From Magallana gigas (lineage: Eukaryota): a stretch of DNA of 64,000 nucleotides. The notes beneath the pieces were generated by a model. That model was given only the letters and a program-made list of their open reading frames with translations. It was not told the origin of the DNA and searched no databases. How positions within the stretch are numbered: position 1 is the stretch's first letter; each line of letters begins with the position of its first letter. The position numbers and the translations under genes are program-made. The DNA is taken from NCBI RefSeq assembly GCF_963853765.1, contig NC_088855.1:47802001-47866000 (forward strand), given 5' to 3'. Below are positions 13,916-19,100 of the stretch, in pieces.

Positions 13916-15571
13916 AACAGGAAGTAGATGCTTATTAAGAATTGAATAGCATATGTCTGCTTCTATTATAATGAGAATATACTTCCTAAGTGGGTACATT
14001 ACTTCATTTTTCTCCTTCAAGTACAGTCAAGACAATTCATGATTTTTTCTGATTTAAGTGGGAAGATTGGAGAACATCTTCCTATGATTAATCCACTACG
14101 TGTGTTCCTAATATAAAACACCCAAGTACTTATTTCAAACATTTATATCCTTTTTTGTCTGTGAACAAGAGTTGCATAAAAGTGAAGCATGGGGGAAATT
14201 ATGAGGAAATAAACTGTTTTATAATCATGCAGAGACATCACTGCTCCATAGGAAGCATCCAGTGTTATCACATACTTCCTGAATCACTTGCAAAATTTAT
14301 TTATATGACTTGAATTTAAATAACTTACAACAAACTGGTCAATGAACTAGCCATACAATTCAGGATAAACAGGAAAAGGAGATATACACATGATCCTTAG
14401 TGCAATGTATCGTATGAACTGCGGTAAACTGTCCGTACTCCCTTTACTAAAATTTGTTTGCATAGATAATGAAAAAACTACTAATTTTACTTTTCTCAAA
14501 ATAGGCTCAAAACTTGATGCTTTAAAGAAAATTTACATGTAATTGCTTTCTTTTTGATAACTTAATAATTAGCTGACATTTAAAAATACAGTAACTGAAT
14601 GTGTCTGTAAGTCAAATTCATTGTAGGGTTGAAATTCTGAATAAATTTATTTTATTACTTATTTCAGCATAATCCTTGTCTAAATCAACCATACATATCT
14701 TTATTGTTGACAAACCCAAGTGAAAAAATATAATAAAAATTCACTACCTTTGTTGAAGTAATTTTTTAATTCATTAAGAAATCACAATTTCTATAAGCCA
14801 AAACTCAATAATGAGTTATTGCACTGTTTTCTGCTCAGTTTCAGCATCATATATCTTTACTGTGTTTAACATTAACACAACTGTGAAAAATAAATTTATA
14901 ATCTTCAACATTTATTTTTTCCTAAGTGAAACACTGCAACTATGTTGTGGAATATTAACATGATTAAGCTTCAAATATTTGTTGATTCACAATAGAAAAC
15001 TTTTATATTATGGGAATTTAATGTCTTTAATATATCCTAGGTGAAATACATAACTGAAAAAATATACACTATAGATAAAACCATGAATACCTTAATAAAT
15101 TGTTATGTGGTCATCATGGTCATGTCTATTGGTAACAACAATGGGGAATAAATGTTTTCCTTTTACAAATGGAAATTTCATAAATCTTGAAATGAATAAG
15201 TTTCATTGTCCAGAATACTAGTACATATAATCCATACATGTACATATATATAAAAGACAACAGTTCTTTGTTTAAGGTATTAGTTTAAGGTCAAGTTCTG
15301 TTTTTATCATCAATATATGATATTTCATATTATTGCATATAGTGGGTTTTTAACAATGCAGCAAGCTGAAAAACTATTCAACAAGTACACCACTACAAGT
15401 CTATAAACGGTTTGTTTGTATGCTTGACAAATGTAACAATAAAGTAAATCATAAATGATTCATAACGTTACACGGATGTATCAGGCCCCCAGTCTCCCCA
15501 TCAAATTACTTACCTGGGGCAGTACAGTCGGCGCACACCTCAGACGCCGCCCTTACTTTTGTCCTGGACAT
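1..15571 (-). CDS. GIT: ARF GTPase-activating protein GIT1/2-like (ArfGAP, ankyrin repeats, Spa2-homology domain); 3'-partial
   Basis: Coding exons (minus): 15571-15514, 12225-12092, 9804-9692, 8057-7958, 7817-7731, 7615-7485, 7307-7213, 7106-7061, 6894-6843, 6750-6678, 6548-6451, 5713-5590, 1176-1007, 89-1 (open at edge). All introns GT-AG with consistent phase. The protein reads [51 protein letters not shown] (ArfGAP zinc finger), [19 protein letters not shown] (ankyrin), [21 protein letters not shown] and [28 protein letters not shown] (SHD repeats), as in vertebrate GIT1/GIT2. Confidence 0.96.
5912..6378. mobile_element. Non-autonomous TTAA-type (Kolobok-like) DNA element in GIT intron
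   Basis: ttaa|AGGGGCAT at 5912 and ATGCCCCT|ttat at 6378; short TIR; one TTAA flank is mutated; no ORF. Confidence 0.65.
8890..8927. repeat. (CT)n microsatellite, interrupted
   Basis: Directly visible. Confidence 0.9.
10450..10991. mobile_element. MITE with GGGCCTAA termini and ATAT flanks (possibly Sola-type)
   Basis: atat|GGGCCTAATTAGGCC ... GGCCATGTTAGGCCC|atat. A 4-bp ATAT duplication fits an AWWT target; superfamily assignment is inference. Confidence 0.55.
13864..13910. repeat. (TA)n microsatellite
   Basis: Directly visible perfect TA run. Confidence 0.95.
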
Positions 15572-16122
15572 GAGGACCTACAAGGGTACCATTTACAGCC
15601 TCGTATTCAGCATAAAATCTCCGAAAGGTACCCTCCCAATTTTTCCACAACACAGAAGAAATATGAAGTAGGGTATTATGTTTCAATGGTAGTTTCGAAC
15701 TATTATTTCCGTTTTTACTTATGAATATTTAAAGAAAACTTATACAGCTTTTAGACATGTTAATAAATAAACAATAAAAATAATCAAGAGCGTTTTATTT
15801 ATGTTCAAAGAATATCGACTTTAGTTTCGTATTTTGTTGTCGTAAAATTTATCTAAGTAATAAACAAAAAAAAATATTATAACAAGCATATATATGCACA
15901 AATCTAATGTATTTCATGTAAAAGGTATACTATTTTGATATATTTCAAATTACATATCAAGTTTTCTGTCGACTTGTGTGCGACAACCGTAAATAATATT
16001 ACCACACGGAAGCAGCATCCTGACTTTCTTTTCGGAATGAAAAACTCTGAATTGGAGGAGTGACTCACAAAGATGGTGTAGTTTGTCATGATCATGATAT
16101 ACTTGGGAAGATAAGACAAGAA
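15572..16122. promoter_or_regulatory. Bidirectional promoter region between GIT and ANKRD13
   Basis: Divergent start codons at 15571 (minus) and 16123 (plus); CpGs are locally retained; ETS-like CGGAAG near 16017. Confidence 0.8.
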
Positions 16123-19100
16123 ATGTCAAGTAAAACTTTGCAGGACGAGTTTCCTATCCACTGGTTGGTGTGGGACAATGATTTCCGTGGAATAGAAAAA
16201 GAGTTATCAAACAACAAATCGAATGTAAATATTTAACATAAACAAATATTTGTTTAAATTTTATAGTGCGACCGTTGGGGCGAGTGCAGCATATATTTGA
16301 ATTAAGAATAAAAATAAAAATAATTTACACTCCAGTATAACATTTATGCTTTACGGTGTGACGGTTTGGATCGCCATTTCACAATCAAATTATACTCTGA
16401 CCCAAGATATCTTGGATTCCCATTTTGCTTAATTGCATGATATTTATAAATACCTCAGGGTTCAAACGATGTTCATTCAAAAGTATTGACAATTCCAAAG
16501 ATTTCTCATTCGAAACGCCCCTGTTAGCTGATCAGGTTTCAATACAATGCTAACAAATGTGATGTCTACGGAGATTTTGTGTTGCAGCAAGCCCGGATGA
16601 TAACGTTGTAAAATTGCTCAATGTATTCCGAATGGAGAAAAGATGTAAACATTCCCCATTATAAATCAATGTAAGGAATCTGTTTTCATTCATGTAAATT
16701 TTTCTGAGTGAAAGATGATAATGTGTCAATGAAATTATCTTGGAAAATATCCCTTTCAACTATTTCAATTTCACTTCTTTCACAGGTATGTGTATTTTTA
16801 TTAAAAATCGTCCAAATGTGCTGCATAAATATCTTGGGACAGACTATAATAAGAAACATCAGAGACATAAATAACAGAGATTGGCAACTCAGCCATTACT
16901 GTGTTTTGTTGACGAAAAATGTTACAGGACCAATATTACTTTGAGAACTACATTTTAGTAAATTGATACATTTACCGGGTATATTGATCTTAAACCAAAA
17001 GTATGTTGTTATGAAAAATGTGCATAGGATTTAAAAGTGTTGGAAACAATAAATTTAATAATAAGAAAAATATATAGAAAATATTAGGGATGTCAAATCG
17101 GTCAATTTTAAGTACTCGGTTACTCGGACGTTTTTCCGATCGAGTACCCGGGTACTCGGTAAAAGTGTAAATAAATATGAACAAGTACATTGATAACTGT
17201 AAAACCTTGGTCACTTTTGTAGAAATAAAACCACATGATCTAATGGGAGGTTTCCCCGTAAGTGTTTTTCTGTTGTAAGAATTATGAGCACTTTGTTTTT
17301 TTAGGTAACTTTTTGTTGCGTTTGACGTCCAAGTATCAGTCGTCAGAGCTACAGTATCAACTCTATCAAGTTCTCCTAACAGAGCGAATTTACGATCTTC
17401 GTACAATTTTTCGATCCTAGATTTTATAGTATTACGGGACAGTATGTTGTAGTTTGGTGCGACGATGGACATAAGTTTTTTAAAGCCTTTGCCTTCGACC
17501 ATTTGTAATGGCATGTAATTAAACATAACCATATCAACAATCCCACGTGTAGTATCATCTGTCTCTTTTCCCGAGATCTTACGGCTTCTTGGAGAATTGA
17601 CAAAATTCGATAAAGTCGGTTGTTTTTCTGGAGTTTCTGGCCTGTCAAATTCCTCCTTATGTTTAAGACGAATGTGATTTAACATGTTTGTCGTTCCCCC
17701 GTATAGGATAAGTTTACTTCGCACAGCTGACATTTTACGTTTTTTGAATCTTCAGTTCTTTTAAAATATTTCCAGACCTTTGATGTAGGTGGCGGCATTT
17801 TAGGTCTGTTCAATTTCTCTACTGTGTGCTATGTAATATATATAACAGACTATATAAACGATATTCAGTGAAAACAAATCATTAAAGTAAGCCAAATATA
17901 AGGGTAGAAGACAGCCAAAGGTGAGAAAAGCTAGGTAACGGGTGCTTGGTCAAGATAATTACTATATAAACACTGCCACAGGCGATAACGGTCATTTAGC
18001 ATATTTTGAGGCATAGGAAATCCTAATTACTGTATGTACAAGTGCAATGGACATTTTAAGTTTTAAAACCGATGTTTTAATGCATTATTAAATAAACTTA
18101 AAAATATTAAAAAATATTCATCCGAGTACCGATTTTAGTATTCGATACTCGGATGTTCGAACGAGTACCCGGTTAACTGGGTACTCATTGACATCCCTAG
18201 AAAATATATAGGCCAGCTATAAAATGTTGGCGAAATCTCGGATGACGAGTAGCCAACTACCACCTGTAACTCCTCTTTAGACGCGAACTCATGAAAATAT
18301 AATATTTTGAATGTTTTGGTAATAGGTTTTAGCTGTTAATATTTCGATATAATTGTTTATTAGAAAGATATACTGATTCAAACTGGGGACACTTAACAAG
18401 AGGGACCGCAAGATTTCAATCAGTTGCCTATCTGTTATTTATGTCTCTGGAAACAAGCGCATATCACTATCTATTTATTCATATTGATACGCTAAAGGTT
18501 GCGTGCTCTGTCTAGACATTGTGACGTCATGCGAGTAGAGCAGACATCACAAGATAGTTTCTGTCAAAGTAACAACTTTCAGAACAATTTGGTTAGAAAA
18601 TAGATTAAAACAACTAGTTGCACTCCATTGTACTTTAATCAGCAGAATGTTGTAATTATATGATTTATCTTTTTAATGCATTTCTTTCTTTAAATACATT
18701 TTTACATGTTCTTGCAAGAACATGACATTGGCAGCCATATACAATTTACAAGGAATTGTGAATATGATTCTCTAAACAGATAAAATTCAGTATGTCAAAG
18801 AGAGCAACAATTCAAATTTTCTCCTCGTCCAGATGATGTCGTTATATAGAGCTTGCAGTGCATGCTGGCCCTTTGCGCTAGCGGGCTGTGCTCACTATGA
18901 TGTGATAATTAAGGCAGCATCAGAATGCATTGCACAAGTTTTTTCATGTAGAGTTGATTTCCTTAATGCACATATTTTTATGTTGTAAAAGTTGACATTG
19001 AGTTCAGAATATTTTAGCTGTAACTATCATTATTTTTGAAGATCTACAGACCAGACCTAAGATTGTCAATAAAATGCTGTATGTTTAACGGTTTGGAGGG

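What the first reader, a model, noticed from the sequence alone, without database searches (positions are those of the whole stretch)
15514..16224. GIT and ANKRD13 head-to-head: the same pairing as human GIT1-ANKRD13B and GIT2-ANKRD13A
The ATGs are 552 bp apart and divergent. In human, GIT1/ANKRD13B (17q11.2) and GIT2/ANKRD13A (12q24.11) are each adjacent and divergent (recalled knowledge). The same arrangement in a mollusc-like genome implies a bidirectional-promoter pair retained since the protostome-deuterostome split. Both proteins act in receptor endocytosis and trafficking, which suggests co-regulation.
Basis: partly seen in the sequence, partly recalled or inferred. Interest (0 to 1): 0.72.

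Follow-up and report, generated by a model that had tools for sequence, protein, structure and literature searches.

The report
Ancient GIT–ANKRD13 head-to-head gene pair
In this oyster genome two receptor-trafficking genes, GIT and a ubiquitin-binding ANKRD13, start back to back about 350 bases apart, and the same pairing in a ribbon worm, an annelid-like worm, termites and a lamprey shows it dates from early bilaterian animals; it is a sound but fairly ordinary example of conserved gene neighbours.

Summary
GIT (minus strand, ATG at 15571) and a UIM-bearing ANKRD13 (plus strand, ATG at 16123) are divergent, with ATGs 552 bp apart. Stranded poly(A) RNA reads confirm both first exons, the GIT exon 1–2 splice and opposite transcription. 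The transcript 5' ends lie only about 350 bp apart, with no reads between them.

The ANKRD13 gene is the A/B/D type, not the C type. It encodes 603 aa in 14 GT-AG exons, carries four C-terminal UIMs, and sits among lophotrochozoan orthologues in a tree that follows the species tree.

A microsynteny survey found the same head-to-head pair in:
- a nemertean (378 bp between ATGs)
- an annelid-like metagenome contig (390 bp)
- three termites (0.9–1.9 kb)
- a lamprey (2.2 kb)

It was not found within 10 kb in Capitella, a crinoid, a hemichordate, an octocoral, a hydrozoan or Trichoplax. No other flanking gene is shared among the loci. The linkage therefore goes back at least to the bilaterian ancestor, with several losses.

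Selected co-regulation is plausible but not shown: the intergenic sequence is not conserved and there are only three RNA runs. This is a new member of a known class, conserved ancient microsyntenic pairs. One lead: a GRK2-type kinase lies directly beside GIT in the nemertean.

The parts
15514..15679 (-). GIT exon 1 (CDS 15571-15514, 19 codons plus 1 nt; 5'UTR reaching at least 15679)
   Evidence: Translation; RNA contig 15514-15679 joined to 12225; the exon-1 peptide and donor position are the same in termite, nemertean, lamprey and L031
12092..12225 (-). GIT exon 2 (core of the ArfGAP zinc finger)
   Evidence: Splice 12225|15514 with CT..AC ends in runs X20-X22 and a contig in X12; Pfam ArfGap E=3.7e-16
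923..9828 (-). Further GIT coding exons, located at ORF level only: about 9691-9828, 7952-8176, 7647-7826, 5498-5737 (SHD) and 923-1231. The gene runs off the left end of the window.
   Evidence: ORF list; Pfam GIT_SHD E=2.4e-11; tblastn matches of 58-93% to the termite and nemertean GIT loci
15680..16027 (.). Shared divergent promoter interval between the two transcript 5' ends (about 350 bp, 26% G+C). CpG is near or above expectation here, while the adjacent intron has no CpG at all over 14601-15400.
   Evidence: Zero RNA depth over 15800-15999 and opposite strandedness on either side; composition and CpG counts
16028..16224 (+). ANKRD13 exon 1 (5'UTR from about 16028; CDS 16123-16224)
   Evidence: RNA contig 16028-16224 and first-mate-minus reads; translation and GT donor
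20427..27204 (+). ANKRD13 exons 2-14: 20427-20562, 20703-20827, 20952-20997, 21147-21200, 21845-21934, 22265-22448, 22602-22668, 23515-23676, 23801-24080, 24469-24630, 24893-24993, 26749-26843, 26997-27204. With exon 1 they give a 603-aa ORF with four C-terminal UIM-like motifs.
   Evidence: tblastn against Ptychodera and Argopecten orthologues; all splice sites are GT-AG and the frame stays open; Pfam Ank and ANKRD13_C, with a borderline UIM_2 hit

Best explanation
This is a real bidirectional gene pair. The oyster GIT gene encodes the ArfGAP scaffold that works with GRKs and PIX in receptor internalisation. The single oyster pro-orthologue of vertebrate ANKRD13A/B/D encodes a UIM protein; its vertebrate relatives bind Lys63-ubiquitinated receptors. 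The two genes are transcribed in opposite directions from one short, AT-rich but CpG-retaining interval of about 350 bp.

Shown: the linkage, the divergent orientation and the first-intron position of GIT are inherited from at least the last common bilaterian ancestor, were kept in molluscs, nemerteans, an annelid lineage, termites and vertebrates, and were lost several times.

Inferred: the pair persists because the two core promoters are too close, and probably too interdependent, for a rearrangement breakpoint to fall between them without damaging the expression of one or both genes. A by-product would be broadly similar, housekeeping-like expression of two proteins acting at successive steps of receptor endocytosis.
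For: Anatomy and transcription in the oyster.

The same head-to-head pair, with the same GIT exon-1 structure (MSR...C[A/C]DC..[A/S/T][P/S], then the donor), is seen in:
- Lampetra L005, ATGs 2211 bp apart
- Zootermopsis L007, 1899 bp
- two further termite host contigs, L014 and L017, about 925 bp
- Tubulanus L009, 378 bp
- the annelid-like contig L031, 390 bp

The ANKRD13 genes at these loci are orthologues; the trees follow the species tree.

Internal control: no other flanking gene is shared among the loci. The other neighbours are MFS transporter and LIN37, iGluR, eIF3c, carbonic anhydrase and an RNA polymerase subunit. Microsynteny around the pair is therefore scrambled while the pair itself persists.

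Chance adjacency of two named genes in a genome of about 25,000 genes is of order 1e-4 to 1e-5 per lineage (my own estimate).

Conserved 5'-5' pairs with intergenic regions under 1 kb are a described class attributed to co-regulation (PMC3514665).
Against: - No intergenic motif or k-mer is shared across phyla. ETS-core sites are enriched only in the oyster (P about 0.02) and L031 (P about 0.002), and not in termites or the lamprey.
- The pair has been lost without obvious consequence in Capitella and a crinoid, and was not seen in Ptychodera.
- By recall, human ANKRD13D has no GIT partner.
- Co-expression rests on three RNA runs only. Depth over the 200-bp bins holding each first exon is 2.1/8.1/1.6 for GIT and 2.8/14.5/0 for ANKRD13.
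- The 5' ends come from RNA-seq contigs, not CAGE.
Confidence: 0.75

Rival explanations
1. Neutral persistence. The pair is ancestral but is kept only because a 0.4-2 kb intergenic gap is a tiny target for breakpoints, and because these lineages (bivalves, nemerteans, termites, vertebrates) rearrange slowly. There is no selection for shared regulation.
For: The intergenic sequence and motifs are not conserved. Repeated losses occurred in Capitella, a crinoid and probably a hemichordate. Spacing drifts from 378 bp to 2.2 kb.
Against: Every other neighbour around the pair differs between the loci, so local gene order has turned over many times while this junction survived in five lineages from three bilaterian superclades. 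Irimia et al. found such retention far above random expectation and linked to co-expression (PMC3514665).
Confidence: 0.2
2. Interleaving constraint rather than a shared core promoter. Regulatory elements or alternative first exons of one gene lie inside the other, as in a genomic regulatory block, so the two cannot be separated.
For: The Tubulanus RefSeq model has a first exon at L009:10001-10105, on the far side of the whole GIT gene, so ANKRD13 would span GIT.
Against: That exon encodes a non-conserved, low-complexity peptide, and the conserved Met lies 378 bp from the GIT ATG. No upstream ANKRD13 exon is seen in the oyster reads: there are no plus-strand-RNA reads left of 16000 and no such joints. 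Neither gene is a developmental regulator of the kind that anchors regulatory blocks.
Confidence: 0.04
3. Convergence. The two genes came together independently in the oyster and in vertebrates.
For: Absence in three non-bilaterians, in Ambulacraria and in Capitella.
Against: The same orientation, the same short spacing and the same partner occur in five lineages spanning Lophotrochozoa, Ecdysozoa and Vertebrata. Independent juxtaposition of one specific pair five times is vanishingly unlikely.
Confidence: 0.01

Closest known systems
Human GIT1-ANKRD13B (17q11.2) and GIT2-ANKRD13A (12q24.11)
   Same: The same two gene families are neighbours. The lamprey locus shows a divergent GIT/ANKRD13B-like pair 2.2 kb apart. 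A published table lists GIT1, ANKRD13B, CORO6 and SSH2 around one CpG at chr17:27.92 Mb.
   Different: Vertebrates have two copies of the pair after genome duplication, and a third ANKRD13 (13D) without a GIT partner. The oyster has one compact pair. The human orientations and distances are recalled knowledge, not tested here.
Conserved ancient microsyntenic pairs (Irimia et al. 2012, PMC3514665), for example the head-to-head HSPD1-HSPE1 pair
   Same: Unrelated genes in 5'-5' orientation with a sub-kilobase spacer, retained across protostomes and deuterostomes.
   Different: Whether GIT-ANKRD13 is among their nearly 600 pairs could not be checked because the supplement is not held. Unlike HSPD1-HSPE1, this pair was not found in the three non-bilaterians sampled, and no shared promoter has been tested.
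Ankrd13A/B/D, the UIM-bearing regulators of EGF receptor endocytosis (Tanno et al. 2012, PMC3315809)
   Same: N-terminal ankyrin repeats, an ANKRD13_C domain and four C-terminal UIM-like motifs, as in Ankrd13A and 13D.
   Different: The oyster gene is a single pro-orthologue of the vertebrate A/B/D genes. Ubiquitin binding and a role in endocytosis are inferred, not tested.

Membership tests
Bidirectional (head-to-head) gene pair with a shared promoter region | The two genes lie on opposite strands and are transcribed away from each other | tested here: met
   Exon structure; stranded reads have the first mate on + for GIT and on - for ANKRD13
Bidirectional (head-to-head) gene pair with a shared promoter region | Transcription start sites less than 1 kb apart with nothing between them | tested here: met
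   Transcript 5' ends reach at least 15679 and at most 16028, so the gap is about 350 bp or less, and depth over 15800-15999 is zero. The 5' ends come from RNA-seq contigs, not CAGE.
Bidirectional (head-to-head) gene pair with a shared promoter region | Correlated expression, or one fragment able to drive both directions | tested here: inconclusive
   Only three runs were read. In two (X20, X21) both first exons are covered, and X21 is highest for both; in X22 GIT exon 1 is covered but the ANKRD13 exon-1 bin reads 0. A reporter assay cannot be run here.
Conserved ancient microsyntenic pair (Irimia et al. 2012) | Phylogenetically unrelated genes adjacent in both protostomes and deuterostomes | tested here: met
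   Oyster, nemertean, annelid-like contig, termites and lamprey
Conserved ancient microsyntenic pair (Irimia et al. 2012) | Conserved relative orientation | tested here: met
   The orientation is 5'-5' in every positive locus
ANKRD13A/B/D subfamily (as opposed to ANKRD13C) | Ankyrin repeats plus an ANKRD13_C domain | tested here: met
   Pfam Ank E=8e-10; ANKRD13_C E=1.3e-33
ANKRD13A/B/D subfamily (as opposed to ANKRD13C) | C-terminal UIMs (three or four; none in 13C) | tested here: met
   Four motifs can be read in the 603-aa model: [41 protein letters not shown] and [13 protein letters not shown]. The Pfam UIM_2 hit is only borderline, E=0.001. The definition comes from PMC3315809.
ANKRD13A/B/D subfamily (as opposed to ANKRD13C) | Phylogenetic placement with A/B/D rather than C | tested here: inconclusive
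   The gene nests with invertebrate orthologues beside vertebrate 13B and 13D, and the Atlas neighbours of its scallop orthologue are 13D and 13A. No 13A or 13C sequence could be fetched for inclusion in the tree.
GIT family of ArfGAPs | N-terminal ArfGAP zinc finger and Spa2-homology domain | tested here: met
   Pfam ArfGap and GIT_SHD
GIT family of ArfGAPs | Coiled coil and C-terminal paxillin-binding (GIT1_C) domain | not testable with these tools
   The 3' part of the gene lies beyond the left end of the window. The termite, nemertean and lamprey orthologues carry GIT_CC and/or GIT1_C.

The most novel reading that the evidence does not exclude
In the nemertean a GRK2/3-type gene starts 2.4 kb beyond the 3' end of GIT on the same strand. 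By recall, human GRK2 (ADRBK1) lies next to ANKRD13D at 11q13. That would be the paralogon that lost GIT, while 17q11 and 12q24 kept GIT and lost the GRK.
Probability: 0.2. Interest if true: 0.6.

Novelty: new member of a known kind. Interest (0 to 1): 0.4.

Why it matters
This is a clean, RNA-supported case of a divergent gene pair kept since at least the bilaterian ancestor. The two products act in the same broad process, removal of activated receptors from the cell surface. It is a tractable test of whether ancient head-to-head pairs are held together by shared promoters or merely by small target size: a 350-bp fragment to test in both directions, natural "broken" lineages for comparison (Capitella, echinoderms, and human ANKRD13D by recall), and duplicated copies in vertebrates. 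It also hints at a functional link between GIT and ANKRD13 proteins; none is described in the papers I found, which were searched for the linkage rather than for a functional interaction. The phenomenon itself is well known, so the value lies in the example rather than the concept.

Tried and rejected
- The sigma-70 promoter and terminator scan does not apply to an animal promoter.
- Searches for shared intergenic k-mers and for common promoter motifs (ETS, NRF1, YY1, SP1, CRE, E-box, CCAAT, TATA, E2F, ZNF143, DRE) across four species found nothing shared.
- The ETS core CGGAA is enriched in the oyster and L031 but absent in termites and the lamprey, so it was dropped as a conserved feature.
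- Literature: no paper in the library holds both ANKRD13 and microsynteny. Papers naming GIT1 with ANKRD13B or GIT2 with ANKRD13A are gene lists only. The Irimia 2012 supplement is not held. The Robert 2022 supplements mention neither gene. Drosophila CG5742/CG16728 papers give no map information.
- Three context look-ups failed for lack of an exact record: Dipodomys 13B, Lingula and a chiton.
- GRK exons were sought in the window and in every fetched locus and found only in Tubulanus, because no other locus extends past the 3' end of GIT.
- Earlier scan notes hold nothing on GRK or GIT.
- No ANKRD13C or vertebrate 13A sequence could be retrieved for the tree.
- Long metagenome contigs with a GIT exon 2 but no ANKRD13 upstream (for example L037, L038, L048, L051 and L052) were not interpreted because their taxa are unknown.
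Full report
**What is in the window.** On the minus strand an ATG at 15571 opens the peptide [19 protein letters not shown] and is followed by a GT donor at 15514. On the plus strand an ATG at 16123 opens [34 protein letters not shown], followed by a GT donor after 16224. Pfam identifies downstream minus-strand ORFs as ArfGap (E=3.7e-16) and GIT_SHD (E=2.4e-11). It identifies plus-strand ORFs as ankyrin repeats and ANKRD13_C (E=1.3e-33). Guided by orthologues, I assembled a complete ANKRD13 model of 14 exons, all GT-AG, giving a 603-aa open frame from 16123 to 27204. 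Its C-terminus carries four UIM-like motifs. GIT runs off the left end of the window.

**Transcription.** The window comes from an oyster: the run labels and an earlier scan note agree. I laid three stranded poly(A) RNA-seq runs and one set of RNA contigs on 12000-17999.
- The GIT exon 1-2 splice (12225|15514, CT..AC on the plus strand) is seen in all three read sets and in a contig. That contig carries exon 1 out to 15679.
- A second contig covers 16028-16224.
- Reads over GIT have the first mate on the plus strand. Reads over ANKRD13 exon 1 have it on the minus strand, so the RNAs are divergent.
- Depth is zero in all runs over 15800-15999.

The transcript 5' ends are therefore about 350 bp apart or less, which meets the usual definition of a bidirectional promoter (under 1 kb). 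The 5' ends are RNA-seq ends, not CAGE tags. The interval is 26% G+C but keeps CpG at or above expectation, while the adjacent GIT intron has no CpG at all over 14601-15400. That pattern fits an unmethylated promoter island flanked by methylated gene bodies; this is an inference.

**Which ANKRD13.** Ankrd13A and 13D have four UIMs, 13B has three and 13C has none (PMC3315809). The oyster protein has four. It is 71% identical to the scallop orthologue, 57-60% to the nemertean, annelid, hemichordate and termite proteins, and 54-56% to vertebrate 13D and 13B. In maximum-likelihood trees it sits with the scallop inside molluscs and Lophotrochozoa. Vertebrate 13B and 13D form one clade (100/100) with the lamprey gene on the 13B side, so the gene tree follows the species tree. 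The nearest ESM Atlas clusters of the scallop orthologue are 13D and 13A, and clusters named 13C rank far lower. I could not fetch a 13A or 13C sequence, so the explicit A/B/D-versus-C tree remains to be done. Every feature tested points to the A/B/D type.

**Microsynteny survey.** A HMMER search of 1.8 billion representatives with the most conserved exon, followed by a word-indexed search, gave named orthologues across animals. I used them to fetch genomic context with 10-kb flanks.

| Locus | Organism | Result | ATG-to-ATG distance |
|---|---|---|---|
| window | oyster | head-to-head | 552 bp |
| L009 | Tubulanus polymorphus (nemertean) | head-to-head | 378 bp |
| L031 | annelid-like metagenome contig | head-to-head | 390 bp |
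| L014, L017 | termite-gut metagenome host contigs | head-to-head | about 925 bp |
| L007 | Zootermopsis nevadensis (termite) | head-to-head | 1899 bp |
| L005 | Lampetra fluviatilis (lamprey) | head-to-head | 2211 bp |
| L004 | Antedon (crinoid) | eIF3c upstream | none |
| L006 | Capitella (annelid) | an unrelated 215-aa gene upstream | none |
| L003 | Xenia (octocoral) | carbonic anhydrase upstream | none |
| L002 | Trichoplax (placozoan) | RNA polymerase subunit head-to-head | none |
| L001, L008 | Ptychodera (hemichordate), Clytia (hydrozoan) | no gene or GIT exon within 10 kb | inconclusive |

Notes on the positive loci:
- In the lamprey, the upstream gene product carries ArfGap, GIT_SHD, GIT_CC and GIT1_C.
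- In Zootermopsis, oyster GIT exons match at up to 93% identity.
- In Tubulanus, the conserved ANKRD13 Met is at L009:22126 and the GIT ATG at 21748. The RefSeq model adds a non-conserved first exon on the far side of GIT.
- L031 came from one scan of metagenome contigs with an alignment of GIT exon 2. It is a compact contig whose ANKRD13 groups with annelids (98/98).
- In all positive loci GIT exon 1 has the same form (MSR...C[A/C]DC..) and the same donor position.

For the two inconclusive loci, large genomes could hide a more distant partner.

**Reading the pattern.** The pair occurs in Lophotrochozoa (three phyla), Ecdysozoa (termites) and Vertebrata, always in the same orientation. No other flanking gene is shared between any of the loci. 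Independent assembly of one specific pair in five lineages is not credible, so the linkage goes back at least to the bilaterian ancestor. It was lost in Capitella and in the crinoid, and the inconclusive hemichordate locus may mean a single loss in Ambulacraria. It was not seen in two cnidarians and a placozoan. It therefore either arose on the bilaterian stem or was lost in those lineages. By recall, the two human pairs and the partner-less ANKRD13D fit duplication of an ancestral pair. The library confirms only that GIT1, ANKRD13B, CORO6 and SSH2 are neighbours and that SSH1 lies within 1 Mb of ANKRD13A.

**Mechanism.** Divergent transcription from a gap of about 350 bp or less, and deep conservation of the junction, are shown. 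It is inferred that the junction is protected because the two core promoters cannot be separated without harm, and that the genes are co-regulated. Support is indirect:
- Conserved 5'-5' pairs with sub-kilobase spacers are a described class linked to co-expression (PMC3514665).
- In two of the three oyster runs both first exons are covered, and X21 is highest for both. In the third (X22), GIT exon 1 is covered but the ANKRD13 exon-1 bin reads 0.

Against selected co-regulation:
- No motif or k-mer is shared across phyla.
- Spacing drifts about six-fold.
- Several lineages have broken the pair.

Neutral survival of a very small breakpoint target remains a serious rival.

**Comparison with what is known, and novelty.** This is a member of the known class of conserved ancient microsyntenic pairs with bidirectional promoters. 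I found no paper describing GIT-ANKRD13 linkage, but supplementary lists that might contain it are not held. I rate it a new member of a known kind, of moderate interest.

**A lead worth following.** In the nemertean a GRK2/3-type kinase starts 2.4 kb beyond the 3' end of GIT on the same strand. Its first exons read [21 protein letters not shown]..., and its Pfam domains are RGS and Pkinase. By recall, GIT was first identified as a GRK-interacting protein, and human GRK2 lies beside ANKRD13D. An ancestral GRK2-GIT-ANKRD13 run is therefore possible. No other locus fetched here reaches beyond GIT, and the oyster window begins inside GIT.

Noticed in passing
L009:1-5672 (minus strand), Tubulanus polymorphus: A GRK2/3-type kinase gene lies 2.4 kb downstream of the GIT 3' end on the same strand, giving a GRK2-GIT-ANKRD13 run. 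Its exon 1 reads [21 protein letters not shown]... and its Pfam domains are RGS and Pkinase. By recall, human GRK2 is next to ANKRD13D.
   Followed up: partly
L009:10001-10105 versus L009:22126: The RefSeq ANKRD13 model of Tubulanus starts with a non-conserved, lysine-rich exon on the far side of the whole GIT gene. The conserved start codon is 378 bp from the GIT ATG. This is either an annotation artefact or an alternative first exon that makes the two genes overlap.
   Followed up: partly
window 16400-17000: A repeat in ANKRD13 intron 1 has very high RNA coverage on both strands (up to about 500x against 2-15x for the host exons). It shows many fixed differences, sharp loose ends at 16622, 16626, 16667, 16848 and 16858, and an opposite-strand joint at 16439/16814. 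It looks like a multicopy foldback or MITE-like element expressed from other copies.
   Followed up: no
window 16993-17828 (minus strand): A 253-aa ORF plus an upstream zf-BED ORF (Pfam E=3.8e-07) lie inside ANKRD13 intron 1, probably a BED-finger transposase-derived element. RNA reads show internal skips (17222-17647, 17607-17696) that suggest deleted copies elsewhere.
   Followed up: partly
window 14601-16000: CpG is completely absent from 800 bp of GIT intron 1 (14601-15400) but is at or above expectation in the promoter interval (observed/expected 1.3-2.1 over 15601-16000). This is the signature of a methylated gene body beside an unmethylated promoter.
   Followed up: no
window 58357-61334 (plus strand): Exons of an inosine-uridine-preferring nucleoside hydrolase gene (Pfam IU_nuc_hydro, E=5.5e-20 and 2.3e-13).
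   Followed up: no
L002:5850-10001, Trichoplax adhaerens: In the placozoan, ANKRD13 is head-to-head with a different partner 1.1 kb away, an RNA polymerase subunit (RNA_pol_L/RNA_pol_A_bac).
   Followed up: no
L031 (JAAUXT010148372.1): A 16-kb contig filed as metagenome is animal host DNA with very short introns. Its ANKRD13 groups with annelids, and the whole ANKRD13 gene fits in about 3.8 kb.
   Followed up: partly
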